NCBI RefSeq assembly: GCF_902713615.1
Contig: NC_052149.1
Span: 99,579,121-99,643,120, forward strand
Reading direction: 5' to 3'
DNA length: 64,000 nucleotides
DNA from: Scyliorhinus canicula
Lineage: Eukaryota
The stretch's first letter is position 1. Each line of letters begins with the position of its first letter. The position numbers were made by a program, and so were the translations under genes. The notes beneath the pieces are model-generated. The model saw only the letters and a list, made by a program, of their open reading frames with translations, searched no databases and had not been told where the DNA came from. Below, piece after piece: positions 3,107 through 63,410 of this stretch.

Positions 3107-3414
3107 ACACGGTGGTTAGCATCAATGCTTCACAGCTCCAGGGTCCCAGGTTCGATTCCCGGCTGGGTCACTGTCTGTGCGGAGTCTGCTCGTTCTCCCC
3201 GTGTGTGCGTGGGTTTCCTCCGGGTGCTCCGGTTTCCTCCCACAGTCCAAAGATGTGCGGGTTAGGTGGATTGGCCATGCTAAATTGCCCGTAGTGTAAG
3301 GTTAATGGGGGGATTGTTGGGTTACGTGGGTTTAAGTAGGGTGATCATTGCTCGGCACAACATCGAGGGCCGAAGGGCCTGTTCTGTGCTGTACTGTTCT
3401 ATGTTCTATGTTCT
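3107..3414 (+). mobile_element. HE1-type SINE with (TTCTATG)n tail
   Basis: Same body as 64-385, ends GTTCTATGTTCTATGTTCTA. Confidence 0.9.
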
Positions 3415-4499
3415 AAATCATTGATCATCAATTGTCTGCGACTTTATATTGTACATATAAATATCGGTTTACTATCAGGAACACTAATCAAATCCTCACT
3501 GTTTGGAAAACAGTACCTGCAATTTTCTTATTTGCACATAAATAAAAATGTAATATGTTCTGAAAGATTTTTAGTCCAACTACATTAATCTAGAATGAAA
3601 ATAGTCCTTGCACACATCAGATAACAACTTTAACTTACAAAGAATGACCACAGCAAATTTCAACACATTTTCCTCCCACTTCCTATGTGAGGGTAAATAG
3701 GTGCTAAACATATGGTTTCATGTTACATTATCCAAAACCCTTCATGTGTCAGTACTCCAATATGCTACAATGAACTTGTATAAGTTGTATTGTATTGTTT
3801 GTCTACACCTCCATCAATCTACTTATAATATTCATTTGATGGGAAATTCTAACGGCTAGTTTCTATTTTTGTTATTGTGTCTGTAAACAATATGATTGAA
3901 AATGAAGATCAACTGCCAAATGAGCATCATTAACACAATTAACAAAGATGCAGTGTGGAGTGAAAAGGAAAACTGGTAAATGAAGGAGCAATAGGGGGTA
4001 TTACGTTAAACAGCCCCATTATGAAGCCACCTGTTCAGTTACAAATCATAGATCTTCATAGGCTGAATTGAGCACCAAAGTGGATCTGGAGAATAAGCAG
4101 GGAATTTAAAAGGCTATTGGTAGCAGAGACTATTCACACTGGTGAATAATATCCTGGAACGTTAATACTCAATCAAATCTTCACCCGATAAAATAACTTT
4201 TGGCACCTTTAACATAGTAAATGTGCCAAGGTACTCCAGAAGTATTATGCAAAGGCACACGCGGGCACGAGACTACACCCAAGTGAGACGTAGACTAATG
4301 AGGAATTGGCAATTTAGTTCAGGTGGGAATATGGGCAGAGGGGCAAAATGCTCCTTTTTTTCAATCTCCAGTGGTTGGTGAGTTTCCTTTTTTGTCTCCA
4401 AGCTAGGTGAATGCAATTTTCTCTGTGTAAATTATTAACTAGCTGACTACTTAAATAAACATGGTTGGATGGAAATGGCAGGGTTAGTAGCGTGCCTTG

Positions 4500-6840
4500 A
4501 CTGAAACATTCGGGAACCTGTGATATGCACAGCAATCCAGAACAGCCATAACTGCAAAAAGTGTCCCAACTGAGGCAACTTTGGCTTCAAGTTGCTGAAC
4601 TGGAATCGGAGTTGCGGACACTGTGGGGCATCAGAGAGGGTGAGTGATACCTGAACACTTGGTTCCAGAAGGCCGTCATTCCCTTTAGGTTAGGGAGAAC
4701 TTAAGAGTTGGTCAGCGAACAGGGGCAAGAGAGTATTTTTACGAGTGATGAAGTTAAGGAGAACGAGCATGTAGTGATGGAGGAGCCTCAGCCTTTGACC
4801 TTGTCCAAAAGGTATGAGATGCTTGTCACTGTGTGGCTGAGAAAATCTGCACGGTGGATGAGCAGACTGACCATGGCAACATGGTAAAAGATACCATTCA
4901 AGTAGGAGGAGTGAAAAGGAATAAGATAGTGACAGAGGATAGTGATAGTCAGGGGGATAGATACCCTCTCAAACAGAGAATCCAGAGAGTACAGAGTGTC
5001 CAGATGGCTGTGTTGTCTACCTGGTGAGAGAGTTAAGGGCATCTACCCTCGTCTAGGAAGGAACTTGCAGTGGTAGGCAGGGGATCCAGTGGTCATGGTC
5101 GATGTAGGTACCAACAACATAAATACAACTAGAAAAACGATTCTATATTAGGGAGAATGAGCAGGTTGGGGCTGTTATTATTCAGCCACAAAAAAATTGT
5201 TGTATGGTAAATAAGATTAGAGAAATTAATACATGGTTCAAAGTCTACACATGGTAGAAATTGCTTTCAATTCATAGGGTACTGGCACCAGTACTGGGGT
5301 GGGAGCTGTGCTGTTAGCACAGTCTACACCAAATCAATGCTGAGACCACTGTTCTAGCGAATCAGTAGAGTGTAAACTAAATAGTTGGGGGGGGGAAGGA
5401 ATCGTGTGAAAGGAGATATAGCAAAGGGAAACAAAGTAATTGCACGGAGCACATGTTGGGTACTAAGTTCCAAGGTGTGATAGGAGGGGGCAGGACATAC
5501 AATCATATGAGTGCACCAGCAGATGAAGTCAAATGGCTATTAAAAAAATAAGGTCTGGTATCTAAATATGTGCAGCATTTGCAACAAAAGGGATCAATTG
5601 TTAACACACGTGGAGATAAATGTGTATGACCTGATTGGCAATAGAGACATGGTTGAAAGGTGACCAAGGGTAGGACCTCAACGTAGAACGGTATTTGACA
5701 TATTGGAACAGGAAGCTACGAAATGTGGCAGGGTAGCTGTTATTTGAGTATGGCATTAGTTAAATACAGAAGCAGCTTGAAAGAGTAAGATTTGAGTAGA
5801 GATAAGCAATAGGAACGGTAAGGGATCACTCGTGGGAGTAGGTTATATTCCTTCCAAGAGTAGAGCGTGTAAGGTTCCGACGGTAACACTGCAATAACTA
5901 GAAAACAAATCTTAACTTCAACTTCAAGTTGAAGGGTAGCACAGTGGTTAGCACTGTGGCTTCACAGCACCAGGGTCCCAGTTCGATTCCCAGCTGGGTC
6001 ACTGTCTGTGCGGAGTCTGCACGTTCTCCCCGTGACTGCGTGGATTTCCTCCAGGTGCTCCGGTTTCCACCCACTAGTCCCGAAAGACTGTTTTGTAATT
6101 TGGACATTCTGAATTCTCCATCTGTGTACCCAAACAGGGGCCGGAATGTGGCCAATAGGAGTTTGTCACAGTAACCTCATTGCAATATAAGCCATCTTGT
6201 GACAATAAAAGTTATTAATTATTAAAATGTTATTGTGCCCAACAACAAATTTGCCATCAAGACATCAGTGTCACCTGTATCCCTTTTATATGTGTGTGCA
6301 GCCTATCAAACAATAAGTGTGGTCGATTAACCAATTACATTTCCAATCCTAATTTCAGCACTGGGGAACATTAACTCTTTCCTAACAGAGCATACATAAA
6401 AAATGGGAAGCACAAGAAAAGTACCATGATAATCATGGGTGACTTTAATCTACATGTAGATTGGGAAAAATCAGATTGACAAAGGGAGCATGACTTTTGG
6501 GACAAATCTGTGATTCTTAGTGTAGGATGTTCTAGAGCCAACCAGGGGGCAGGGTATCAGATATGTGGTAATGTGCAGCGAGTCAGGATTAATCACATCT
6601 AAGTGACAGCAATCATGATAGAATTTCATGTTCAGTTGGAAATGGAGAAGTATGGATCCATGACGAATATGTTCCATTTAAATAAAGGTATCCAGAATAT
6701 GAAGGCAGAGTTGGCTCTGGTGAACTGGGAAAAGGTAACACAGTAGAGTTGCAATGGCAGACTATATTTAATAATACGCAGAAAAGATGTATCCTAGTCG
6801 CAAGAAAGGCCTTTTGAGAAGGATGGTTCCCCTTGTCGGG
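4500..6840 (+). mobile_element. Decayed CR1 LINE (ORF1 esterase and endonuclease region), interrupted by a SINE
   Basis: Remnants GATCCAGTGGTCATGGTCGATGTAGGTACCAACAACATA and ATCATGGGTGACTTTAATCTACATGTAGATTGGG resemble the better-preserved copy at 23.4-25 kb. Confidence 0.7.
5934..6222 (+). mobile_element. V-SINE variant with alternative 3' tail (..TCACAGTAAC..GTGACAATAAA(TTA)n)
   Basis: HE1-like head and V domain, followed by a tail shared with the copies at 11211, 46301 and 61162. Confidence 0.85.
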
Positions 6841-11210: not shown

Positions 11211-11501
11211 AATAACAATAATAACCTTCGTTGTCACAAATAGGCTTACATTAACACTGCAATGAAGTTACTGTGAAAAGCCCCTAATTGCCATCTGTTC
11301 GGGCCCACAGAGGGAAAATTCAGAATGTGCAAGTTACCAAACAGCACAGCTTTCGGGACTTGTGGGAGGAAACCGGAACACCCAGAGGAGACCCACGCAG
11401 ACAGAGGGAGAACGTGCAGAGAGTGACCCAAGCCGGGTATCAAACCTGGGACCCTGGCTCTGTGAAGCAACAGTGCTAACTACTGTACTACTGGGCTGCC
11501 C
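11211..11501 (-). mobile_element. V-SINE variant with alternative tail, inserted in an L2-like fragment
   Basis: Reverse complement of the 5934 family. Confidence 0.85.
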
Positions 11502-16873: not shown

Positions 16874-17052
16874 GTGAAATGAAAATCGCTTATTGTCACA
16901 AGTAGGCTTCAAATGATGTTATTGTGAAAAGCCCCGAGTCGCCACATTCCAGCGCCTGTTCGGGGAGGCTGGTACGGGAATGGAACTGTGCTACTGGCCT
17001 GCCTTGGTCTGCTTTCAAAGCCAGTGATTTAGCCCTGTGCTAAACCAGCCCC
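16874..17052 (-). mobile_element. Short tRNA-headed SINE lacking the V domain, tail CTTTTCAC..GTGACAATAAG(TTTCA)n
   Basis: Reverse complement begins GGGGCTGGTTTAGCACAG. Tail shared with the 5934 family and with the fragment at 34578-34640. Confidence 0.75.
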
Positions 17053-19092: not shown

Positions 19093-19376
19093 ATGAATTT
19101 ATTTGGGACTTTAATGGGGGCGGTTGGGAGAGGTTGATTGAGAGGAATTGTAGTTTGTATCTGTCATATGCCTGGGATTGAGGGAGCTACGGTTGTCAGG
19201 GTCAGGTCACCGGAATGGGGAGTATATGGTCCCCTGAGGGAGTTTATTTAAGAGTGTTGGGTTTTGGTTGCTCTTCTCTAGCCAGTATGGAAGGGTCATT
19301 TTTCTTTGTTCTTTGAGCATACACCCTGCTAGCTATAAAGTTTCAGCTAGTTTCAGTTTAAACCTGGTTACTGTGA

Positions 19377-19603
19377 GGGCAGCATGATGGTGTAGTGGTT
19401 AGCACTGCTGCCTCACAGTATCAAGGACTCAGCTTCAATCCAGTCCCGGGTCACTGTCCGTGTGGAGTTTGCACATTCTCCCCTTGTCTGCATGGGTGTC
19501 ACCCCCACAACCCAAAGATGTGCAAGGTAGGTGGATTGACCACACTAAATTGCCCCTTAATTGGGAAAAAAAAAATAATCGGGTACTCTAAATTTATTTT
19601 TAA
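19377..19603 (+). mobile_element. Short V-SINE with A tail and 14-bp TSD
   Basis: TSD AAACCTGGTTACTG at 19360-19373 and 19604-19617. Confidence 0.88.
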
Positions 19604-21193
19604 AAACCTGGTTACTGCAAACACATCTTTAACTTGGAACACTACATTTACACTTCCTTGAATTCTTTTGACCAATACATTGGTCTCTGTTCACTTAACT
19701 TCAGCCATTTTAAACTTTCCTTCTCTCCCAGCTCCTTGGTTATCTGGACTATAATTTGTACTTTAGGAAGACTGCTTCTTTCCAGCTCCCATCCGGTCCC
19801 TTCTTTCTGCTGGTTGAGTTGAGACATGTTCACTCCCAAAGTCCTTTCTCCAACTGTCAATAAATTAGCTAAACTAAAACTAAAAAGCTTCTCTATCTTA
19901 CAGGGGCCCAGTTGCAAAACACGGCATACCTCTGCTGAGGTTTTTATTCTTGACACCATAGCCCTCTCAAAACACAATGGAATCATAGGTGGAACATAAC
20001 TAACCTTCATACATGCAAATACCTTTGCCCAACATTAACCTAATTATAGTTTTTACCCTTCCCAGGCACAGAAACATTAAATTAATCCCACTTAAAACTA
20101 TATCTTATTTCTAGTGTTAACCAATACAAATATAAATCCTTTAAAACTACCTTTATTTTCTTAACGATTGACTCAACGATTGAAAAAAGTAAAGAATTGT
20201 GTCCTTATCTCAATTCTAAATCAAAAGGACTTGCAGCATCACTACAGCAAACTTTCTGTTTCTAATCAACGTGATGAAGTATCCATTGCACAGGGAACAC
20301 AGGCTTTTTGTCGACAACCATGTTCAAAAACGATAGACTAAAATAACAATGTGAGTTAGCTTGTGAACGGTTTACTTAAATTAGTTTGCCCAGAAGAATG
20401 GCAGACTTGTATATTCTTATTATCTTTATGTTAGAGGGAACAGCTTTACGGGGAAACTATATTATGTTCACTCACACTGCGTTTAAAATAAACCGGTTTC
20501 TCATCATGTCTCACCTCATTAAAGTGCATTTCACTCCTCCTTTCAAAAAAAAACATGGCAACATTTACAAAATTAGAGTACAAATTGTGCTCGACCACAT
20601 GTACATGTTGCACTATCACTTCACAAGATGTTGGACAACAGAAGTGACCTGCTGAGCATAGAAAGTTCACGGCCTACTTATGACAATATATACTGCAGAT
20701 CTATGAACCCTATAACACTGGTTCAGAGCAGCACCAACGGTGATCTGGGGTCACAATACCTCTCCTCACAGCAGAATCAGTACAGAACAACTGCAAACCT
20801 GGAGGGCTGAGAGAAAATAAAGAACCTAACCAATCAACTAAAATATATTGCATTCTATAATTTTGCAGCCACTCAATAGAAACATATTGAAAAGTATCTT
20901 AAGGATTTGATCCAGTTTTGTTTAAATTACGGTTGCCGGTTGTTGGTGAGACATTGCTGAAACTCAGTAGAAATTCAAGTTAAAAACTTGTCAGGTGCAA
21001 ATAAGAATTGTTTTATTGAAGTTCATTGGTTACAACTTGAAAATGATTTAAAAGGTAGTTTGTAGACAATTTGATTTTCTTCAAAGAATCACAGGAATTA
21101 TCTTCTGAGACAATAGCCTGAACACAACTTTAAAAGTCAAAGGCTGAAGTCAAAGTATGAAAATTAAATAGGAATACAGAACTCTTTTCTAAT

Positions 21194-22217: not shown

Positions 22218-22563
22218 GGGGCAGCAGGGTAGCATGGTGGTTAGCATAAATGCTTCACAGCTCCAGGGTCCCAGGTTCGATTCCCGGCTGGGTCACTGTC
22301 TGTGTGGAGTCTGCACGTCCTCCCCCTGTGTGCATGGGTTTCCTCCGGGTGCTCCGGTTTCCTCCCACAGTCCAAAGATGTGCGGTTTAGGTGGATTGGC
22401 CATGCTAAATTGCCCGTAGTGTCCTAATAAAAGTAAGGTTAAGGGGGGGGGGTTGTTGGGTTACGGGTATAGGGTGGATACGTGGGTTTGAGTAGGGTGA
22501 TCATGGCTCGGCACAACATTGAGGGCCGAAGGGCCTGTTCTGTGCTGTACTGTTCTATGTTCT
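22218..22563 (+). mobile_element. Full-length HE1-type SINE with (TTCTATG)n tail
   Basis: Closely similar to the 3107 copy. ATAATCGGG repeated at both junctions (22212-22220, 22564-22572). Confidence 0.92.
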
Positions 22564-33500: not shown

Positions 33501-34640
33501 AAAGCTATAGGAAGGAGTGAGAATGATTGGCTAAGGATGATGCAAAATAAAGAAATATAAACAAAATAAAATATATGGGATGTAAGTACATTTTAATACA
33601 GATACTAGCAGGATAAGAAATAATGGAATTGGAAGCATAAACATAGAGAGAAAAGTGCAATGCAACTGGTACACAAATGGCATTGACAGAATAATTAAAA
33701 GTTTATAAAAAGGGAAAGTCGGAATAAAAAAGAAATATCAATATAGGTGAAGAAAAAAGTAATCTTCTGAGAAATTAATGCGTTTTTGGCAGAGATACGC
33801 AAGCTACAATTGGTATGAGCATTAAAGGAAACAGTGATTTCAGGATAATCTTCTGAACCGCCTGGAAAAGAGGAAGGAGAAAATCAAAAACTATAAAATT
33901 GTCAGAACTTAATGATGGTAGCTTCACATTATGGTAGACAGCAGATGCCTTATGAGCCAATAGCTTTATCCCTCCCATGATACATTTCCAATTTCTTCTC
34001 CAGATAGTTCTGTTGCTCAAATCTAATTTTAATTTTGAATCAATAGGCTGTTTTAAAGTGACAATTGGTAGCCAATGTAGTAACCAGCTAGTCTTACAAG
34101 TCAGTATTCAGCCCATTAATGGTTTAAAAAATGATTTTGAACTGAAGAGCCAATGAGCAGAGAACATGCTGAATGTATGACCTTCCACTTATTGTAACAA
34201 CACAGCAAGCAACGCATATCCAACTCCATTTCAATGGTGAATACTGGTCATTGGTAGGATAGACAATTATTTAACGCTGTTACAAGCTGCATAATGGAAA
34301 CACACAAAATTCCAGCAGAGTGCAGCCAAGCAGAGCTGCTGATTGGCTGTTGCGGGGAAAATTTGCATCAGTGCATTGCGGTCACTGTATCCAGAAGGTG
34401 ATTTGTGAGCTGTTGTCAAGTGACAGTTAAACCCCAAACACTTCTTTCGTGTTTCCCTCCCTACCTTCTCTAACCAAAAAAAAACAATCATGCTCAGGAT
34501 CCCAGCCGAGTAAAGATCAAGAAGGAGACTCGAGGGCAGGTACAAGTAGAAAGAAATTGAACCGTTCAACTTCTTTCAGCAGTAACTTCATTGAAGCCTA
34601 CTCGTGACAATAAGCGATTTTCATTTCATTTTTCATTTTC

Positions 34641-35170
34641 AGATGGAGTGCAATCCGGCCAAATGCGAGGTGATGCATTTTGGAAGATCCAATTCAAGAG
34701 CGAACTATGAGGTAAATGAAAGCCCTGGGGAAAATTGATGTACAGAGAGATCTGCTTGTTCAGGTCCATTGCACCCTGAAGGTGGCTGCGCAGGTCGATA
34801 GAGTGGTCAAGAAGGCATATGGCATGCTTTCCTTCATCGGAAGGGGTATTGAGTACAAGAGTTGGCAGGTCATGTTACAGTTGTATAAGACTTTAGTTCG
34901 GCCACATTTGGAATACTGCGTACAGTTCTGGTCGCCACATTACCAAAAGGATGTGGATGCTTTGGAGAAGGTGCAGAGGAGGTTCACCAGGATGTTGCCT
35001 GGTATGGAGGGTGCTAGCTATGAAAAAAGGTTGAGTAGATTAGGATTATTTTCATTAGAAAGATGGAGGTTGAGGGGGGACCTCTGAGGTCTACAAAATC
35101 ATGAGAAGTATAGACAGGGTGGATAGCAAGAAGCTTTTTCCCCACCAGAGTGGGGGACTCAATTACTATG
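34641..35170 (+). mobile_element. CR1 LINE RT C-terminal fragment
   Basis: ORF 34716-35087 LYKTLVRPHLEYCVQFWSP. Confidence 0.92.
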
Positions 35171-38012: not shown

Positions 38013-38518
38013 GAAGCACGGTCCTATAAACTACAATTTTGTGAACAATTCGATGGTACTTGATCAAACACCTCTTGAAAGTTCATACACATCAACTGTA
38101 CAAATCTCATCAACCCTCGCCATTACTTCCTTAATGAACATAGGTCATCAGATATCTGCTCCTGTATGAACAAGATTTTACTTCTAAAAATTTCATTTAA
38201 ACACTTTCTGCAATAACTAATTGACATAATGTCTAAAATATGACTATAAGCACAATTTAAACAAAATTAAAAGTTAAAATATTATATATTCGGTAACATG
38301 GTCTATCTATTGAATAATACTTCCATTAAATTTCAAATGATGATCTCCAGCTCACCAAAATATCTGGCTTTATTTCTGATATTATTAACTAAAACCACTA
38401 ACTTAGCTCAATTAAGACTGTACAGTTTCAACATTTATGATATATTTAATTTCCTAACATGTATCAGTATTGTTCAGCTGAAAACATTTCTACGGCAGAG
38501 CCCTGGCCAACGGAGACT

Positions 38519-38845
38519 TAGAATCATAGAATACCTACAGGGCAGAAGGCCATTTCACCCATCGAGTGTGCAACGACCCTCTGAAAGAGCACCCTGCCCA
38601 ATCCTCCATCATATCCTCGGAAACCAACCGAACCATTGGACACTAAGGGACAATTTAGCATGGCCAATACACCTAACTTGCACATCTTTGCACTGTGGGA
38701 GGAAACTGGAACACCCGGAGGAAACTCACGCAGACGCGGGGAGAACGCACAAATACCACACAGGCAGTCACCCGAGATCGGAATTGACCTGGGTCCCTGG
38801 CGCTTTGAGGCAGCAATGCTAACCACTGTGCCATCATACCACCCC
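38519..38845 (-). mobile_element. HE1-type SINE
   Basis: Reverse-complement HE1 body and tail. Confidence 0.88.
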
Positions 38846-41486: not shown

Positions 41487-41694
41487 GATTTCCAGTCAGA
41501 GGGATACGCCCACATCTGGCCGAGTTACATTGTCCCATTGAGACTTAAACTGTCAGTGGGAATACATAGGATGGCCCGGTTCAGCAAGGATGATTCAAGA
41601 TCCATTATCTTTTGGGGCACTCCTGTCTGACCAGCTATCAGTCGATTACAGGGAGAGATAGGAGGGTGCAGAGAAAGAGAGAAAGAGGGGGTTG

Positions 41695-42096
41695 NNNNNN
41701 NNNNNNNNNNNNNNNNNNNNNNNNNNNNNNNNNNNNNNNNNNNNNNNNNNNNNNNNNNNNNNNNNNNNNNNNNNNNNNNNNNNNNNNNNNNNNNNNNNNN
41801 NNNNNNNNNNNNNNNNNNNNNNNNNNNNNNNNNNNNNNNNNNNNNNNNNNNNNNNNNNNNNNNNNNNNNNNNNNNNNNNNNNNNNNNNNNNNNNNNNNNN
41901 NNNNNNNNNNNNNNNNNNNNNNNNNNNNNNNNNNNNNNNNNNNNNNNNNNNNNNNNNNNNNNNNNNNNNNNNNNNNNNNNNNNNNNNNNNNNNNNNNNNN
42001 NNNNNNNNNNNNNNNNNNNNNNNNNNNNNNNNNNNNNNNNNNNNNNNNNNNNNNNNNNNNNNNNNNNNNNNNNNNNNNNNNNNNNNNNNNNNNNNN
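41695..42096. other. Assembly gap (402 N)
   Basis: Run of n characters. Confidence 1.
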
Positions 42097-44980
42097 CGAG
42101 AGACGCAGAGAGCGAGAGAGCAGAGAGCGAGAGAGCGAGAGAGAGCGAGAGAGCGAGAGAGAGCGAGAGAGCGAGAGAGAGCGAGAGAGCGACGCAGAGA
42201 GAGAGCGAGAGAGCGACGCAGAGAGAGAGCGAGAGCGACGCAGAGAGAGAGCGAGAGCGACGCAGAGAGAGAGCGAGAGCGACGCAGAGAGAGAGCGAGA
42301 GCGACGCAGAGAGAGAGCGAGAGCGACGCAGAGAGAGAGCGAGAGCGACGCAGAGAGAGAGCGAGAGCGACGCAGAGAGAGAGCGAGAGCGACGCAGAGA
42401 GAGAGCGAGAGCGACGCAGAGAGAGAGCGAGAGCGACGCAGAGAGAGAGAGCGAGAGCGACGCAGAGAGAGAGCGAGAGACGCAGAGAGAGAGCGAGAGC
42501 GACGCAGAGAGAGAGCGAGAGCGACGCAGAGAGAGAGCGAGAGCGACGCAGAGAGAGAGCGAGAGCGACGCAGAGAGAGAGCGAGAGCGACGCAGAGAGA
42601 GAGCGAGAGCGACGCAGAGAGAGAGCGAGAGCGACGCAGAGAGAGCGCGAGAGCGACGCAGAGAGAGCGCGAGAGCGACGCAGAGAGAGCGAGAGCGACC
42701 AGAGAGAGCGCGAGAGCGACGCAGAGAGAGCGCGAGAGCGACGCAGAGAGAGCGCGAGAGCGACGCAGAGGGCGAGAGCGACGCAGAGGGCGAGAGCGAC
42801 GCAGAGGGCGAGAGCGACGCAGAGGGCGAGAGCGACGCAGAGGGCGAGAGCGACGCAGAGGGCGAGAGCGACGCAGAGGGCGAGAGCGACGCAGAGGGCG
42901 AGAGCGCCGCAGAGGGCGAGAGCGACGCAGAGAGCGCGAGAGCGACGCAGAGAGCGCGAGAGCGACGCAGAGAGCGCGAGAGCGACGCAGAGAGCGCGAG
43001 AGCGACGCAGAGAGCGCGAGAGCGACGGAGAGAGCGCGGAGCGACGGAGAGAGCGCGGAGCGACGGAGAGAGCGCGGAGCGACGGAGAGAGCGCGGAGCG
43101 ACGGAGAGAGCGCGGAGCCACGGAGAGAGCGCGGAGCGACGGAGAGAGCGCGGAGCGGCGGAGAGAGCGCGGAGCGACGCAGAGAGCGCGAGAGCGACGC
43201 AGAGAGCGCGAGAGCGACGGAGAGAGCGCGAGAGCGACAGAGAGAGCGCGAGAGCGACAGAGAGAGCGCGAGAGCGACAGAGAGAGCGCGAGAGCGACAG
43301 AGAGAGCGCGAGAGCGACAGAGAGAGCGCGAGAGCGACAGAGAGAGCGCGAGAGCGACAGAGAGAGCGCGAGAGCGACAGAGAGAGCGCGAGAGCGACAG
43401 AGAGAGCGCGAGAGCGACAGAGAGAGCGCGAGAGCGACAGAGAGAGCGCGAGAGCGACAGAGAGAGCGCGAGAGCGACGCAGAGAGCGCGAGAGCGACGC
43501 AGAGAGCGCGAGAGCGACGCAGAGAGCGCGAGAGCGACGCAGAGAGCGCGAGAGCGACGCAGAGAGCGCGAGAGCGACGCTGAGAGCGCGAGAGCGACGC
43601 TGAGAGCGCGCGAGCGACGCAGAGGGCGAGAGCGACGCAGAGGGCGAGAGCGACGCAGAGGGCGAGAGCGACGCAGAGGGCGAGAGCGACGCAGAGGGCG
43701 AGAGCGACGCAGAGGGCGAGAACGACGCAGAGGGCGAGAACGACGCAGAGGGCGAGAGCGACGCAGAGGGCGAGAGCGACGCAGAGGGCGAGAGCGACGC
43801 AGAGGGCGAGAGCGACGCAGAGGGCGAGAGCGACGCAGAGGGCGAGAGCGACGCAGAGGGCGAGAGCGACGCAGAGGGCGAGAGCGACGCAGAGGGCGAG
43901 AGCGACGCAGAGAGCGCGAGAGCGACGCAGAGCGCGAGAGCGACGCAGAGAGCGAGAGCGACGCAGAGGGCGAGAGCGACGCAGAGGGCGAGAGCGACGC
44001 AGAGAGCGAGAGCGACGCAGAGAGAGCGAGAGCGACGCAGAGCGAGCGAGAGCGACGCAGAGAGCGAGAGCGACGCAGAGAGCGACGCAGAGAGCGCGAG
44101 AGCGACGCAGAGGGCGAGAGCGACGCAGAGGGCGAGAGCGACGCAGAGCGAGAGCGACGCAGAGAGCGAGAGCGACGCAGAGGGCGAGAGCGACGCAGAG
44201 GGCGAGAGCGACGCAGAGGGCGAGAGCGACGCAGAGGGCGAGAGCGACGCAGAGCGCGAGAGCGACGCAGAGGGCGAGAGCGACGCAGAGGGCGAGAGCG
44301 ACGCAGAGGGCGAGAGCGACGCAGAGAGCGAGAGCGACGCAGAGGGCGAGAGCGACGCAGAGAGCGAGAGCGACGCAGAGAGCGAGAGCGACGCAGAGAG
44401 CGAGAGCGACGCAGAGGGAGAGCGACGCAGAGGGAGAGCGACGCAGAGGGCGAGAGCGACGCAGAGAGCGAGAGCGACGCAGAGAGCGAGAGCGACGCAG
44501 AGAGCGAGAGCGACGCAGAGAGCGAGAGCGACGCAGAGAGCGCGAGAGCGACGCAGAGAGCGAGAGGGACGCAGAGAGCGAGAGGGACGCAGAGAGCGAG
44601 AGGGACGCAGAGAGCGAGAGGGACGCAGAGAGCGAGAGGGACGCAGAGAGCGACAGCGACGCAGAGAGCGAGAGCGACGCAGAGAGCGAGAGCGACGCAG
44701 AGAGCGAGAGCGACGCAGAGAGCGAGAGCTGGACGCAGAGAGAGAGAGATAGACACAGAGAGAGAGAGATAGACACAGAGAGAGAGAGATAGACGCAGAG
44801 AGAGAGATAGACGCAGAGAGAGAGATAGACGCAGAGAGAGAGAGATAGACAGAGAGAGAGAGAGACGCAGAGAGAGAGACGGAGAGAGAGAGAGAGAGAT
44901 GCAGAGAGAGACGCAGAGAGAAAGGCAGAGAGAAAGGCAGAGAGAAAGAGACGGAGAGAGAGAGAGACGCAGAGAGAGAG
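42097..44980. repeat. CpG-rich GA-derived minisatellite (18-22 bp units, core GAGAGCGACGCAGAG)
   Basis: Direct inspection. The plus strand has almost no T, and the array grades into (GA)n-like repeats at the right end. Confidence 0.97.
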
Positions 44981-45664
44981 AAAGTAAATGCTGTTTAGGA
45001 CTAACCCAATACCAGATCCCCGGTATTTATCAACCCTTCCACATTTTCTACCATTAAAAAAATCAAAGAAATAGAAGGAGGGCATTATGGCCCAATGGCA
45101 TTATTGTTCCATTGCAGATCTCCAGTTTCTACTGTGGAATATTTGGGACTACTCCATAACTAAATCGGTACAAACTGAATGGAAGAATGAAGGAATTAGG
45201 TTTCCCAAATATCTTCGCTAATGGAGCACAAAATGGGAATTTACCTCACTATTTCAAAATAATAGGATGTAATTTAGGCGCTTAAAGCTAGCCTCGCTTA
45301 TACTATCAGAGTACTGGAGCTGTTTGGGATCATCCATCCATTCAAAACAGGATTAGCGTTAGTCCTAAACTTGTGTTTGGGAGTTAGGTACCTGCTTTAG
45401 TTTTTTTTACATTAAAAGCCAACATTGAAACATTGTGCAAAAGCTATGAGGCTGTTTACTGAGTATTTGTTGAGAAATGGAAGAGAAACAAATATATGGA
45501 TAATGAGAAATGAGAGGGGATGTGGTGAATTAAAACTGTGTTTTTAAAAATGAAAGAATGAAAATGAAATCATATCAATTGACTTTAAGGGACAAATCTG
45601 AAAGAATTGATAACCATCATAACAAAGGTCTTTAGTTGACTTGGGCTGTCACAATGTGCACAAT

Positions 45665-46300: not shown

Positions 46301-46487
46301 ATAATAATCTTTATTAGTGTCACAAATAGGCTTACTTGAACACTGTAATGAAGATACTGTGAAAATCCCCTAGTCGCCACACGCTGCCTGTTCGGGTACA
46401 CTGCGGGAGCATTCAGAATGTCCAATTCACCTAACAAACATGTCTTTCGGGACTTCTGGAAGGCAACTGGAGGAAACCCATGCAGAC
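46301..46487 (-). mobile_element. V-SINE variant (alternative tail), 5'-truncated
   Basis: ATAATAATCTTTATTAGTGTCACAAATAGGCTTAC..GTGAAAATCCCCTAGTCGCCAC. Confidence 0.8.
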
Positions 46488-47424
46488 TCTTCATTTGTTA
46501 CTTCACAGAGTTGCAGAGTCAATGCAAAGTCTTTTCTGTCCCTATTACACCACTTACAGGGGTCAAATATAACAGCTAGAAATAGGACATGCTACACTGA
46601 ATATCACTGCAATCAAATAGTTACTCCTGTAAATAAGAGACTAGACTGTATTCAATTTCCTAAGCAGAATCAGTTTTCTACAATTAATAGTCTCTGCATA
46701 ATTATCCTACATTGGGGAAAATGCCCAAATTTTGAAAAATCTATGTGGAAATATTAATGCAAGATTGCTTCTCCAGCAAATGTTGAACATTCTAGTTTAC
46801 ACAATATAGTTTACAGCAACATCCACAACTGTACCAGAGTTTTATTTAGACCAAATAAAGCAGATATAACATCAGAAAATTTAAAGTGATTTTTTGTTCC
46901 TCATTTGCTACACATTAAAAAAACTAATTTTCTATAAAAACAGATAAGACTGGTTACACCTGGTCACAAACCTGTTTTCAATGGACTCATTAAACCTTTC
47001 TGTACATTTCATTAAGTACATGATTTATCAGAAAAAACTAAGATTGAATTTCCTAGTCAAAATTTGCATTCAAAAAATCTTGGATTAGAAATGTAAGCGG
47101 AAAGATTCTTGAAGCTTTTAGACAATGAGAGTAAAATACATTATTTGTCTGCATTGTAAACAAACTATTGAATACTAAAGATTTGCAAATTTATATTTTT
47201 TTTAATTACTTTTTTGTTTTGGTTTTAGCTTCTCAGCTAAATAAATTTCACATAACCACAAATGGCATTTATTTGACCATCACCTGATGAACTGCTGGTC
47301 TACTCAACTGAGAGACCAAGTATTTCTATGCTGCAAAGAAAAATCTAAAAGATCGCTAAGCTTTTTCTTTTCTGGGGGATCTGGAATGAGATGTGGCATA
47401 CATTTAGGGATAATGTGAATTTAC

Positions 47425-49039: not shown

Positions 49040-49465
49040 TCTGCGAACGAAACAATTGCTATGTCCTTCCACAACCACAAGACATCTCAAAAGTACTTTA
49101 CAGCCAATTAAACACTTTTTGCAGTAGTCACTGTTGTATTAGGGAACACAGCAGCCAATTTGTGCATAGCAAGCTCTCACAACAAGTGTGATAAAAAGCA
49201 GATAATCTGTTTTGTTGATTCAGGGATAAATACTGGTTATCGCACCGGGGATAATGCCCCTGCTCTTCATCAAAATAGTGCCATACGACCTTTTACATCT
49301 ATTCAAATGGGCAGGCAGGACTTCAGTTTAATGTGTCATCAAATAAACAGCAACTCTGACAATGCAATACGGCACTCACAGCCTTGATTATTCAAGTCCT
49401 CACTCAATACTCAAGTCCTGGAGCAGAGCCTGAACTCACAACCTTCGGACTCAAGACACCACAGT
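49040..49465 (-). mobile_element. DeuSINE (SacSINE1/AmnSINE1-like)
   Basis: Deu-domain-like CCCTGCTCTTCATCAAAATAGTGCCAT..CTTTTACATC..GTTTAATGTGTCATC, with a tRNA-like head at the right end. Confidence 0.65.
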
Positions 49466-59372: not shown

Positions 59373-61040
59373 CTTGGATTGGATTGGATTTGTTCATTGT
59401 CACGTTCGCCGAGATACAGTGAAAAGTATTTTTCTGTGAGCAGCTCAACAGATCATTAAGTACATGGAAAGAAAAGGGAATAAAAGAAAATACATAATAG
59501 GGCAACACAAGGTATACAATGTAACTACATAAGCACCGGCATAGGATGAAGCATACAGGGGTGTAGTGTTAATGAGGTCAGTCCATAAGAGGGTCATTTA
59601 GGAGTCTGGTAACAGCGGGGAAGTAGCTGTTTTTGAGTCTGTTTGTGCGTGTTCTCAGACTTCTGTATCTCCGACCCAATGGAAGAAGTTGGAAGAATGA
59701 GTAAACCTTGTGGGAGAGGTCTTTGATTATGCTGCCCGCTTTCCCCTGGCAGCAGGAGGTGTAGATGGGAGTCAATGGATGGGAGGCAGGTTCATGTGAT
59801 GGACTGGGCGGTGTTCACAACTCTCTGAAGTTTCTTGCGGTCCTGGGCCAAAGCAGTACCCATACCAGGCTGTGATGCAGCCAGATAGGATGCTTTCTGC
59901 GGTGCATCTGTAAAACTTGGTAAGAGTTAATGTGGACATCCCAAATTTCCGTAGTTTCCTGAAGAAGTATAAGCGCTGTTGTGCTTTCTTGGTGGTAGCA
60001 ACGACGTGGGTGGACCAGGGCAGATTTTTGGAGATGTGCACCCATAGGAATTTGAAATTGCTAACCATCTCCACCTCGGCCCCGTTGATGCTGACAGGGG
60101 TGTGTACAATACTTTGCTTCCTGAAGTCAATGACCAGCTCTTTGGTTTTGCTGGCATTGAGGGAGAGATTGTTGTCGCTGCACCACTCCACTAGGTTCTC
60201 TATCTCCCTCCTGTATTCTGACTCATCGTTATTCAAGATCCGGCCCACTATGGTCGCATCGTCAGCAAGCTTGTAGATGGAGTTGGAATCAAATTTTACC
60301 ACGCAGTTAAATGTGCACAGGGAGTAGAGTAGGGGGCTAAGTAAGCAGCCTTATGGGGCCCCGGTATTGAGGACTATTGTGGAGGTGTTGTTGTTCATTC
60401 TTACTGAATGTGGTCTGTGGGTCATAGAGTCAAGGATCCAGTTGCAGAGTGGGGAGCCAAGTCCGAGGTTTTGCTGCTTTGATATGAGCTTGGCTGGGAT
60501 TATAGTGTTGAAGGCGGTTCTTTAGTCAATAAATAGGAGTCTGATGTAGGAGTCCTTGTTGTCGAGATGCTCTAGGGATGAGTGTAGGGCCAGGAAAATG
60601 GCGTTTGCTGTGGATGAGTTGTGGCGGTATGCGAATTGCAGTGGGTTAAGGCGTTCTGGGAGTATGGAGGTGATGCACTTCATGACCAACCTCTCAAAGC
60701 ACTTCATTACGACTGAAGTCAGGGCCACCAGACAGTAGTCAGTCACGTTGCCTGGCTATTCTTTGGCACCGGTATGATGGTGGTCTTCTTGAAGCAGGTG
60801 GGGACCTCAAAGTGGAGTAGGAACAGGTTATAGATGTCTGCCAGCTGGTCCAAGCACACTCTGAGTGCACAACCATGGATCCCGTCCGGGCCCGTCGCCT
60901 TCCGAGGGTTCCCTTTAGGAAAGCCAATCTGACTTTGGAAGCTGTGATGGTGGGTATGGGTGAGTTATGGACTACTGGTGCACTGGACAGCGGATTGTTG
61001 GTTTCCTGCTCAAACCGAGCATAGAATGCATTGAGTTTAA
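59373..61040 (-). mobile_element. Rex1/Babar-clade LINE (RT and 3' end) inserted in a CR1
   Basis: [29 protein letters not shown] and KLADDATIVG..LSLNASKTKELVIDFRK. (ATCCA)n tail. Confidence 0.88.
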
Positions 61041-61161
61041 GTGAACTCCTTCACTTAAAGGACTGCGAATCTGTGGAATTTGCTATCACTGAGCTGTGCA
61101 TATCCAGTCAAGTCAGAGATTGACAGATTTTGGGATACTAAGGGAATCAAGGACTATGGAG

Positions 61162-61462
61162 ATAATAATAATTTTTCTTGTCACACGTAGGCTTACATTA
61201 ACACTGCAATTAAGTTACTGTGAAAAGCCCCTAGTCGCCACATTCTGGCACCTGTTCGGGTACACAGGAGGAATTTAAAATGTCCAATTCACCTAACAGC
61301 ACTTCTTTCGGGACTTGTTGTAGGAATCCGGAGCATCCGGAGGAAACCCACGCAGACACAAGGAGAACGTTCAGACTCCTCACAGTGACCCAAGGCGGGA
61401 ACTGAACCTGGGACTCTGGAGCTGTGAAGCAACTGTGCTAACAACTGTGCTACCATGCTGCT
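61162..61462 (-). mobile_element. V-SINE variant (alternative tail)
   Basis: Same family as 5934 and 11211. Confidence 0.85.
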
Positions 61463-62079: not shown

Positions 62080-63410
62080 GATGGGTCTTTATGATCACCA
62101 TGGAAGGCTGTGACTAGCGGTGTTCCACAGGGATCAGATCTGGGGCCTTGGTTATTTGTGGTGTATATAAATGAGTTGGAAGAAAATGTAGCTGGTCTGA
62201 TTAGTAAGTTCGCAGACCACACAAAAACTGATGGAGTTGCGGATAGTGAAGAGGATTGTCAGAGGATACAGCAGGATATAAACTAGTTGGAGTTTTGGGC
62301 GGAGAAATGGTAGATGGAGTTTAATCCGGATAAGTGTGAGGCAATGCACTTTGGAAGGTCCAATGCATGTAGGAATTACACAACAAATGGCAGAACTCTT
62401 GCGAGTATTCACAGTCAGAGAGATCTGGGCGTGCATGTGGATACGGTGGTCAAGAAGGCATACGGCATGCTGACCTTCATCAGTCGGAGCACTGAATATA
62501 AAACTGGCATGTCATGTTGCAGCTGCAAAGGACCTTAATTAGGCCTCATTTGGAATTTTGTGTACAATTCTGGTCGTCACACTACCAGACAGATTTGGGT
62601 GCTTTGGAGAGAGTACAGAAGCGGTTTACTAGGATGTTGCCTGGTATGAAGGGCATTAGCTATGAGGAGAGGTTATGGGCAGCACGGTAGCCTTGTGGAT
62701 AGCACAATTGCTTCACAGCTGCAGGGTCCCAGGTTCGATTCCAGCTTGGGTCACTGTCTGTGTGGAGTCTGCACATCCTCCCCGTGTGTGCGTGGGTTTC
62801 CTCCGGGTGCTCCGGTTTCCTCCCACAGTCCAAAGATGTGCAGGTTAGGTGGATTGGCCATGATAAATTGCCCTCAGTGTCCAAAATTGCCCTTAGTGTT
62901 GGGTGGGGTTACTGGGTTATGGGGATAAGGTGGAGGTGTTGACCTTGGGTAGGGTGCTCTTTCCAAGAGCCGGTGCAGACTCGATGGGCCGAATGGCCTC
63001 CTTCTGCACTGCAAATTCTATGATAAACTTGGTCTGTTCTCACATGAACAACGGAGGTTTAGAGGTCCACAAGATTATGAGTGGCATGGACAGAGTGGAT
63101 AGTCAGATGCTCTTTCCTAGGGGACATAGGTTTAAATGTGAGGGGGAAAGTTTAGAACCGATATGTGAGGCAAGATTGTTTTTTACACAGAGGGTGATAA
63201 ATATACGGAACGTGCTGTCTGGGGAGATGGTGGGACAAGGTACATTAGTGGCATTTAAGGGACATCTGGACAAATATATGAATAGGGTGGGAATGGAAGG
63301 ATACGGACTCTAAGTGCAGACAGTTTTAGTTTAGGCAGGTGCCATGGTTGGTGTAGGTTTGGAGGGCCGAAGGGCCTGTTCCTGTCTGGTATTGTCTTTG
63401 TTCTACTACT
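62080..63410 (+). mobile_element. CR1 LINE RT C-terminus and 3' end, interrupted by an HE1 SINE
   Basis: MEFNPDKCEAMHFGRSN and VVKKAYGML. CR1 3' UTR GGGCCGAAGGGCCTGTTCCTG. Confidence 0.88.
62677..63022 (+). mobile_element. Full-length HE1-type SINE
   Basis: Complete head, V domain and CR1-like tail. Confidence 0.92.

What the first reader, a model, noticed from the sequence alone, without database searches (positions are those of the whole stretch)
5934..6222. V-SINE with a swapped 3' tail resembling the Rex1/Babar LINE end: likely change of LINE partner
Seen: copies at 5934, 11211(-), 46301(-) and 61162(-) keep the HE1-type head and/or V domain but replace the CR1-like tail with consensus CTTTTCACAGTA...TACTTGTGACAATAAA(TTA)n. 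The Rex1/Babar LINE in this window ends (reverse complement of 59373-59430) CTTTTCACTGTA..ACGTGACAATGAA(ATCCA)n. The flanking motifs and a TCAC/GTGA stem are shared. Established: stringent LINEs mobilise SINEs that carry their 3' stem-loop, and HE1 pairs with the CR1-clade LINE HER1. Inference: this family is mobilised by a Rex1/Babar LINE. I do not recall this pairing being described in sharks.
Basis: partly seen in the sequence, partly recalled or inferred. Interest (0 to 1): 0.7.

Follow-up and report, generated by a model that had tools for sequence, protein, structure and literature searches.

The report
Shark SINEs carrying a Rex1-like tail
Two families of short shark retrotransposons, one of them a V-SINE, end in a small RNA hairpin that copies the end of a Rex1/Babar LINE. 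This suggests they hijack that LINE to spread, a pairing not found in the searchable literature for vertebrates.

Summary
Four V-SINE copies (5934, 11211-, 46301-, 61162-) match ordinary HE1-type copies up to about 20 nt before CCCGAACAGG. From there they carry a different tail of about 95 nt.

Both families also occur in Scyliorhinus torazame.

I collected 11 Rex1-type LINE 3' ends from sharks, a sawfish and a charr. All share one architecture: TCAC, a 5-bp upper stem, a one-base bulge, GTGA, CAATAAA, then variable short repeats. The SINE tails keep this architecture. The one LINE-invariant pair that differs, U-A, is changed on both sides to A-U.

A covariance model built from LINE tails alone ranks the tRNA-head SINE tails as the best non-LINE hits (20-23 bits, noise about 12.5). 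The V-variant tails, which have a longer loop, score near noise.

Limits:
- Only about 45 nt are LINE-like.
- No LINE with the full SINE tail was sampled.
- There are no target-site duplications.
- Mobilisation was not tested.

The V-variant probably acquired the tail by exchange with the other SINE. At least ten unchecked first-reader notes on other DNA of this genome make the same claim. I rate it a new member of a known kind, of moderate interest.

The parts
5934..6128 (+). V-SINE copy 1: tRNA-like head (box A TAGCACAGTGG, box B GTTCGATTCC) and V domain
   Evidence: About 86-90% identical to classical HE1-type copies of the window over the first 140-155 nt.
6129..6222 (+). Copy 1: alternative tail module. 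It runs from CCCAAACAGG to the hairpin (about 6166-6202), then CAATAAA and AT-rich TTA-type repeats.
11211..11500 (-). V-SINE copy 2 with the alternative tail (tail 11211-11303)
46301..46490 (-). V-SINE copy 3, 5'-truncated inside the V domain, with the alternative tail (46301-46396)
61162..61460 (-). V-SINE copy 4 with the alternative tail (61162-61260)
16880..17052 (-). Second SINE family: a different tRNA-like head joined directly to the same tail. It ends GCGA plus TTTCA-type repeats.
   Evidence: A S. torazame copy of this head is called tRNA-like by ARAGORN.
34573..34643 (+). 5'-truncated, tail-only copy of the second SINE family, inserted in a CR1-like LINE
59373..61038 (-). 5'-truncated, frameshifted Rex1/Babar-type LINE fragment holding RT pieces, a PF09004 segment, the C-terminus and the 3' UTR
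59388..59433 (-). LINE 3' terminal element: TCAC/GTGA helix with a bulge (59422-59400), CAAT, a linker, then (ATCCA)3 down to 59373. The upper stem of this copy is decayed.
22220..22562 (+). Classical HE1-type V-SINE with the long CR1-like tail, used for comparison. Other copies lie at 65-400, 3108-3440, 38500-38840(-) and 62680-63015.

Best explanation
The window holds two non-autonomous retrotransposon families that share one 3' tail module of about 80-95 nt. One is a V-SINE of HE1 type, the other a short SINE with an 88-nt tRNA-like head.

The last ~45 nt of that module imitate the 3' terminal recognition element of Rex1/Babar LINEs. That element is a hairpin with a 4-bp lower stem (TCAC/GTGA), a one-base bulge on the 3' side and a 4-5 bp upper stem. 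It is followed by CAATAA(A) and short tandem repeats of variable sequence.

Inferred mechanism:
1. Pol III transcribes the SINE from the A and B boxes in its head.
2. The reverse transcriptase of a Rex1-type LINE binds the hairpin at the RNA 3' end, as it does on its own RNA (stringent recognition).
3. It copies the SINE into the genome by target-primed reverse transcription, with the terminal repeats helping priming.

The V-SINE variant most likely arose when an HE1-type V-SINE, normally tied to a CR1-clade LINE, exchanged its tail with the tRNA-head SINE or their common source. That exchange changed its LINE partner.

Shown here: the anatomy, the conserved LINE architecture, the compensatory change, and the presence of both families in two shark species. 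Inferred: binding by the Rex1 enzyme, the direction of the exchange, and which LINE subfamily was the partner.
For: **LINE identity**
- RVT_1 plus PF09004.
- Relatives are spread across teleosts, S. torazame, Pristis, Mobula and Hypanus.
- The peptide motifs encoded by the published Rex1 primers lie 570 nt apart, against a published amplicon of about 550 bp (PMC4635592).
- The conserved 3' UTR end followed by variable oligonucleotide repeats matches the published description of Rex1 (PMC6274825).

**LINE tail architecture**
- In 11 tails, 92.9% of cells are paired, against 6-62% when partners are slid. Three pairs change on both sides.

**SINE tails**
- In 16 copies with both arms, the lower stem is 97% paired and the upper stem 89%.
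- The LINE-invariant U-A pair is A-U in 14 of 16 copies.

**LINE-only covariance model**
- The best non-LINE hits are SINE tails: 23.2, 21.0, 20.9 and 20.6 bits in L013 (E 0.035-0.13, noise 12.5) and 19.6 bits in L014.

**LINE-invariant pattern**
- 0.01 matches expected per 64 kb.

**Tail exchange**
- The V-variant aligns with classical HE1 copies until about 20 nt upstream of CCCGAACAGG, and with the tRNA-head SINE from CCCGAACAGG on.

**Distribution**
- Both families occur in S. torazame.

**Mode of insertion**
- 5'-truncated copies exist.
- There is no poly(A) and no long target-site duplication.
Against: - Similarity to the LINE is confined to about 45 nt and is split by a loop of 11-24 nt, against 4 nt in shark LINEs.
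- Generic alignment gives only z 1.2-4.8.
- V-variant tails score 14-16 bits with the LINE-only model, close to noise.
- Folding energy is not better than shuffles.
- The first ~35 nt of the tail module have no counterpart in LINE 3' UTRs.
- None of 18 SINE-type tails in 251 kb follows a LINE ORF, so no LINE with this exact tail was seen.
- Terminal repeats differ: (ATCCA)n or (TCAA[A])n in LINEs, ATT- or ATTTC-type in SINEs. They also vary within the SINE family.
- All copies are old, with pairwise K2P about 0.22. Activity periods could not be compared.
Confidence: 0.6

Rival explanations
1. The tail comes from, and is used by, a LINE that is not Rex1/Babar, for example an L2 or CR1-group family not sampled here whose end happens to carry a similar hairpin. 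The sampled Rex1 elements would then be look-alikes only.
For: No sampled LINE carries the full tail. The 5' 35 nt have no Rex1 match. Terminal repeats differ from the sampled Rex1 copies. CR1-group LINEs in general end in a hairpin plus short repeats (PMC3747384).
Against: The [GT]G[AG]C(T)AATAAA-plus-repeats terminus recurs in all Rex1-type LINE ends fetched, including distant ones. The CR1-like tails of the window show no similarity to the SINE tail. Of the 18 columns invariant in the five-tail LINE alignment, 16 are kept in the SINE consensus, and the two that differ form one base pair.
Confidence: 0.15
2. The resemblance is chance or convergence. The tail is an ordinary SINE body, and the AT-rich end is used by a relaxed, L1-like enzyme.
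For: The matches are short. The LINE-only model gives E of 0.03-3 per 130-200 kb searched. There is no thermodynamic signal. One copy ends in poly(A), at L013 58873. Another first-reader note reports A-tailed V-SINE forms in this genome (s1-223521, unchecked).
Against: The match sits exactly at the 3' terminus in both elements, which shrinks the search space by about four orders of magnitude. The helix is kept in 16 old copies, 89-97% paired, with a two-sided change. No long target-site duplications were found. The usual ends are ATT or ATTTC repeats, not poly(A).
Confidence: 0.1
3. The tail was once Rex1-derived, but the V-variant copies are dead products of a single old recombination and were never amplified through it. 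The few copies would then come from segmental duplication or be chimeric insertions.
For: Only 4 copies lie in the window and about 4-5 in 187 kb of S. torazame. All are diverged.
Against: The copies lie in unrelated flanks, on both strands and in two species, with the same junction and the same family-specific 11-nt loop insertion. That pattern is what retrotransposition of a master copy produces.
Confidence: 0.1

Closest known systems
HE1 SINE / HER1 LINE of elasmobranchs (Ogiwara et al. 1999; listed in PMC3747384)
   Same: Same tRNA-like head and V domain. Classical copies with the CR1-like tail ending ATTCTATG lie in the same window.
   Different: The tail module from CCCGAACAGG onward is replaced. 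It ends in a Rex1-like hairpin, CAATAAA and ATT repeats instead of the CR1-type end.
UnaSINE1 / UnaL2 of eel (stringent recognition of a 3' stem-loop plus terminal repeats; cited in PMC3747384)
   Same: A short conserved 3' stem-loop followed by short tandem repeats is shared by LINE and SINE. Stem sequence may vary while pairing is kept.
   Different: That pair belongs to the L2 clade and has been tested experimentally. Here the LINE is Rex1-type, the SINE loop is much longer than the LINE loop, and nothing has been tested at the bench.
SINE2-5_NV / Rex1-24_NV of Nematostella (PMC3747384, Table 1)
   Same: A SINE whose partner is a Rex1-clade LINE. It is the only Rex1 pairing in that compilation.
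   Different: It is a cnidarian element with no V domain. No vertebrate Rex1 pairing is listed there or was found in the searchable papers.
CmiSINE and SacSINE1-CM sharing the L2-2_CM tail in Callorhinchus (PMC5499810)
   Same: Two SINE families with different heads or bodies share one tail. The SINE-SINE shared region is longer than the LINE-like part, which points to SINE-to-SINE module exchange.
   Different: The partner there is an L2 LINE with about 79% contiguous tail similarity. Here the partner type is Rex1 and the similarity is mainly architectural.
Bivalve V-SINEs with several LINE partners (PMC11481361)
   Same: One V-domain superfamily is tied to different LINE clades through swapped tails.
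   Different: The partners reported there are CR1, CR1-Zenon, L2 and Nimb. Rex1 is not among them.

Membership tests
V-SINE superfamily (HE1 type) | [quoted passage not shown] | tested here: inconclusive
   Box-like motifs TAGCACAGTGG and GGTTCGATTCC are visible in the copies. ARAGORN and Rfam call no tRNA in these decayed heads.
V-SINE superfamily (HE1 type) | Conserved central V domain | tested here: met
   About 80% identity over ~190 nt to classical HE1-type copies of the window. A 20-mer of the domain occurs verbatim in primers printed for grouper and tiger shark. The published V consensus itself was not available, so identification as V rests partly on my own knowledge.
V-SINE superfamily (HE1 type) | 3' tail homologous to the CR1-clade partner HER1 | tested here: not met
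   The tail differs from the CR1-like tail of classical copies from CCCGAACAGG onward. This is the point of the finding: a V-SINE, but not the classical HE1 family.
Rex1/Babar LINE (the element at 59373-61038) | Reverse transcriptase of Rex1 type | tested here: met
   RVT_1 plus PF09004. Relatives are in teleosts and elasmobranchs. The peptides of the Rex1-specific primers ([FY]SSAFNT and RLFxLR) lie 570 nt apart in relatives (PMC4635592). Identity to the window's CR1-like LINEs is only 22-32%. No tree with named Rex1, CR1 and L2 references could be built.
Rex1/Babar LINE (the element at 59373-61038) | Conserved terminal 3' UTR followed by oligonucleotide tandem repeats of variable size and sequence | tested here: met
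   Eleven tails share the terminal element. The repeats are (ATCCA)n, (TCAA)n, (TCAAA)n and (TTTGA)n. Description of the feature: PMC6274825.
Rex1/Babar LINE (the element at 59373-61038) | AP endonuclease upstream of RT; no ORF1 | tested here: inconclusive
   The window copy is 5'-truncated inside RT. The upstream ORF of a distant relative (L007) gave no endonuclease hit.
Stringent-type SINE/LINE pair | SINE 3' end homologous to the 3' end of a LINE in the same genome | tested here: inconclusive
   Motif, position and helix architecture are shared, with a compensatory change. Contiguous similarity is short, and no LINE with the full tail was sampled.
Stringent-type SINE/LINE pair | The same terminal repeat unit in SINE and LINE | tested here: not met
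   The sampled LINEs end in (ATCCA)n or (TCAA[A])n. SINEs end in ATT- or ATTTC-type repeats, once in poly(A). Repeats vary among Rex1 elements by definition, so the weight of this failure is uncertain.
Stringent-type SINE/LINE pair | LINE-dependent mobilisation of the SINE tail | not testable with these tools
   Needs a retrotransposition assay.

The most novel reading that the evidence does not exclude
Rex1/Babar LINEs use stringent recognition of a minimal 3' element: a 4-bp stem, a bulge, a 4-5 bp stem, CAATAAA and repeats. This element has been conserved from sharks to salmonids. In sharks two unrelated SINE heads captured it, which would be the first vertebrate SINE families driven by Rex1. 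The long SINE loops would then show that only the helix base and the 3' flank are needed.
Probability: 0.45. Interest if true: 0.55.

Novelty: new member of a known kind. Interest (0 to 1): 0.4.

Why it matters
SINE-LINE partnerships are documented mostly for the CR1, L2 and RTE clades. In the compilation I could read, Rex1 has a single partner, in a sea anemone. It is also reported as the most frequently horizontally transferred element of the CR1 group (PMC13343379).

If Rex1 drives two abundant shark SINE families, three things follow:
- The V-SINE superfamily gains another partner clade.
- It becomes a clear vertebrate case of escape from a partner by tail exchange.
- The natural variation (loop length, compensatory pair, variable repeats) marks out the RNA element that the Rex1 enzyme probably needs. 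That can be tested directly in a retrotransposition assay.

For annotation, these tails would otherwise be filed as unclassified SINEs.

Tried and rejected
- **Read laying:** No read-based family consensus or copy numbers could be made. Whole-window local scans had that stretch only as a passive target. The classical copy at 62680-63015 was left out of later comparisons.
- **Generic Smith-Waterman of SINE tails against LINE tails:** weak, z 1.2-4.8.
- **BLAST of whole SINEs against the window's LINEs:** only a 15-nt match. The accepted HE1/CR1 pair gives just 33 nt at 79% with these decayed copies, so single-copy BLAST has little power here.
- **RNA folding energy against shuffles:** no signal.
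- **First two LINE-only models (4 and 5 tails):** window SINE tails at E 1.5-4.5, and one S. torazame tail at E 0.053.
- **Strict signature with exact CAAT:** only 2 SINE sites against 0.86 expected.
- **Rex1 PCR primers at the DNA level:** uninformative, 7-12 mismatches. Only their encoded peptides match.
- **LINE origin for the 5' 35 nt of the tail:** scores at chance in all shark LINEs. A 10-mer match to a Salvelinus LINE ORF end (4 of 500 shuffles) is probably coincidence.
- **Target-site duplications:** none found.
- **Rfam and ARAGORN on the window heads:** nothing found.
- **Distant LINE relatives L007-L009:** they share only the terminal CAATAAA-plus-repeats part.
- **Literature searches for the tail letters:** only unrelated primers.

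Full report
**1. Observation**

A local BLAST shows that their first ~190 nt match about ten other V-SINE copies of the window at roughly 70-90%. Those classical copies, for example 22220-22562, carry a long tail ending in the CR1-type ATTCTATG motif. A multiple alignment places the divergence about 20 nt upstream of CCCGAACAGG, and CCCGAACAGG marks the start of the segment shared with the second SINE.

**2.

The same tail is joined to a completely different head at 16880-17052(-). A 5'-truncated, tail-only copy lies at 34573-34643(+) inside a CR1-like LINE.

In Scyliorhinus torazame DNA fetched through LINE proteins (L001, L013, L014; 187 kb), both families recur. Together with the window there are 18 SINE-type tails:
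- 8 are preceded by a V-type head.
- 5 are preceded by the other head according to BLAST.
- Several more are assigned by their junction or loop type.

One S. torazame copy of the second head is called an 88-nt tRNA-like structure by ARAGORN, directly followed by the tail. None of the 18 tails has LINE coding remnants upstream.

**3. The LINE**

The fragment 59373-61038(-) is 5'-truncated inside the reverse transcriptase and is frameshifted. Its pieces hit RVT_1 and PF09004. Relatives are numerous in teleosts and in S. torazame, Pristis, Mobula and Hypanus.

The peptides encoded by the published Rex1-specific primers, FSSAFNT and SRLFLLR, have counterparts in intact relatives ([FY]SSAFNT and RLFxLR) 570 nt apart. 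The reported amplicon is about 550 bp (PMC4635592). The window's CR1-like LINEs have LDFQKAFDKV instead and are only 22-32% identical. [quoted passage not shown] I could not build a tree with named reference elements, and the endonuclease could not be checked.

**4. The LINE 3' element**

I gathered 11 tails: the window, five from S. torazame, one from Pristis, one from an ENA contig, two from Salvelinus and one more S. torazame subfamily.

All have the same layout:
- TCAC (TCGC in one tail);
- a five-base upper arm;
- a loop of 4 nt in elasmobranchs and 23-24 nt in Salvelinus;
- the complementary arm;
- one bulged base;
- GTGA, then C(T)AATAAA and short repeats that differ between copies.

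On the alignment, 92.9% of cells are paired, against 6-62% when partners are slid, and three pairs change on both sides. Better-preserved S. torazame copies of the same (ATCCA)n subfamily show that the odd upper arm in the window copy is decay. More distant relatives keep only the CAATAAA-plus-repeats terminus.

**5. The SINE tails against that element**

In the 16 SINE copies that keep both arms, the lower stem is 97% paired and the upper stem 89%. The bulge sits at the same place. The pair that is U-A in all 11 LINE tails is A-U in 14 of 16 SINE copies. Loops measure 11-13 nt in the tRNA-head family and 24 nt in the V-variant, which has an extra 11 nt.

Of the 18 columns invariant in the five-tail LINE alignment, the SINE consensus keeps 16. 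The two exceptions are the two sides of that one pair. Adding more LINE tails reduces the strictly invariant set to 10 columns.

**6. Is it more than chance?**

Results depend on the test, so I give them all.

| Test | Result |
|---|---|
| Generic local alignment | z 1.2-4.8 |
| Folding energy against shuffles | no better than shuffles |
| Pattern from LINE-invariant columns, exact | 0.01 expected per 64 kb; also matches a S. torazame SINE tail |
| Same pattern, at most one mismatch | LINE plus four SINE tails in the window, against 0.2 expected |
| Covariance model from the 11 LINE tails, L013 | after the LINE tails, the next four hits are SINE tails: 23.2, 21.0, 20.9, 20.6 bits (E 0.035-0.13); noise starts at 12.5 bits |
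| Same model, L014 | tRNA-head tail at 19.6 bits |
| Same model, V-variant tails | 14-16 bits, near noise |

All copies descend from one tail, so this counts as one independent event with E of roughly 0.03-0.1 in an unrestricted search. The match lies exactly at the 3' terminus of both kinds of element, which reduces the search space by orders of magnitude. I take the similarity as real. It is clearest for the tRNA-head family, and the V-variant inherits it through the shared module.

**7. Limits**

- The first ~35 nt of the shared module have no counterpart in LINE 3' UTRs or ORF ends.
- No sampled LINE has the SINE-type stem, loop or repeats.
- Terminal repeats are ATT-type in the V-variant. 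In the other family they are mostly ATTTC-type, but one copy has ATT repeats and one has poly(A).
- No target-site duplications were found.
- V-variant copies differ pairwise by K2P 0.22 and classical ones by 0.30, with one young pair. Nothing can be said about overlapping activity.
I worked beside that stretch from then on.

**8. Interpretation**

The best reading is a stringent-type partnership with a Rex1/Babar LINE, reached by tail exchange. The region shared by the two SINE families is longer than the LINE-like part. The V-variant therefore probably took the tail from the tRNA-head SINE or a common precursor, not from a LINE. This is the same reasoning used for the CmiSINE and SacSINE1-CM families in Callorhinchus (PMC5499810). 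The general mechanism, SINEs borrowing a LINE enzyme through a common 3' stem-loop and repeats, is established for other clades (PMC3747384). Its application to Rex1 here is inference.

**9. Novelty**

Known V-SINE partners are CR1-clade LINEs (HER1, ZfL3, LfR1), an L2 in Xenopus, and CR1, CR1-Zenon, L2 and Nimb in bivalves (PMC3747384; PMC11481361). The only Rex1 pairing I found listed is in Nematostella. Searches for Rex1 with SINE terms, and for the tail letters themselves, found no description in sharks or other vertebrates.

At least ten first-reader notes on other parts of this genome make the same claim, and none is marked as checked. The result is a new member of a known kind, moderately interesting to transposon specialists.

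Noticed in passing
window 41525-45085: A long low-complexity tandem-repeat block that includes a run of N. It gives artificial ORFs of more than 1000 aa on both strands.
   Followed up: no
window 49089-49116 (+): Scores 15-18 bits with the LINE-tail models, but the whole hairpin is missing (AAAAGTACTTTAC..GCCAATTAAAC). It is either chance or a deleted Rex1 tail. No RT remnant was checked upstream.
   Followed up: partly
window 61038-61162: The 5' end of the truncated Rex1-type LINE lies only about 120 nt from the 3' end of V-SINE copy 4, on the same strand. This is probably coincidence, and I did not examine the junction.
   Followed up: no
L006 1522-1587(-) and 4170-4238(+); L005 6078-6158: Salvelinus alpinus Rex1-type LINE tails have the same helix and bulge, with 23-24 nt loops and (TTTGA)n repeats. 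In one lineage the upper stem is fully replaced (TACAC/GTGTA). This is natural evidence that loop length is free in LINEs too.
   Followed up: partly
Pfam PF09004 hits, e.g. window 59772-60302(-): The Pfam family ALKBH8_N matches a segment just after the RT domain of these LINEs. Many fish proteins named 'AlkB homologue 8 N-terminal domain-containing' in public records look like Rex1-type LINE fragments.
   Followed up: partly
L013 58873(-) and L014 24464(+): Copies of the tRNA-head SINE end in poly(A) and in (ATT)n rather than the usual ATTTC-type repeats. The terminal repeat is therefore not fixed within the family.
   Followed up: partly
L013 48435-48480 (+): A copy of the tRNA-head SINE whose loop is reduced to a few bases. 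Its hairpin is the same size as the LINE's, and it scores 20.6 bits with the LINE-only model.
   Followed up: partly
L003 1940-3435: In an ENA contig, the Rex1-type ORF is cut off by a sequence with a TATA-like box and AATAAA, followed by a 393-aa ORF. This may be an LTR element insertion.
   Followed up: no
Nothing was laid and the single call was consumed. The stretch was not used as a query afterwards.
   Followed up: no
window 19360-19617: Another first-reader note (s1-213901) describes a tail-less short V-SINE form here. BLAST shows a head-only match at 19394-19500.
   Followed up: no
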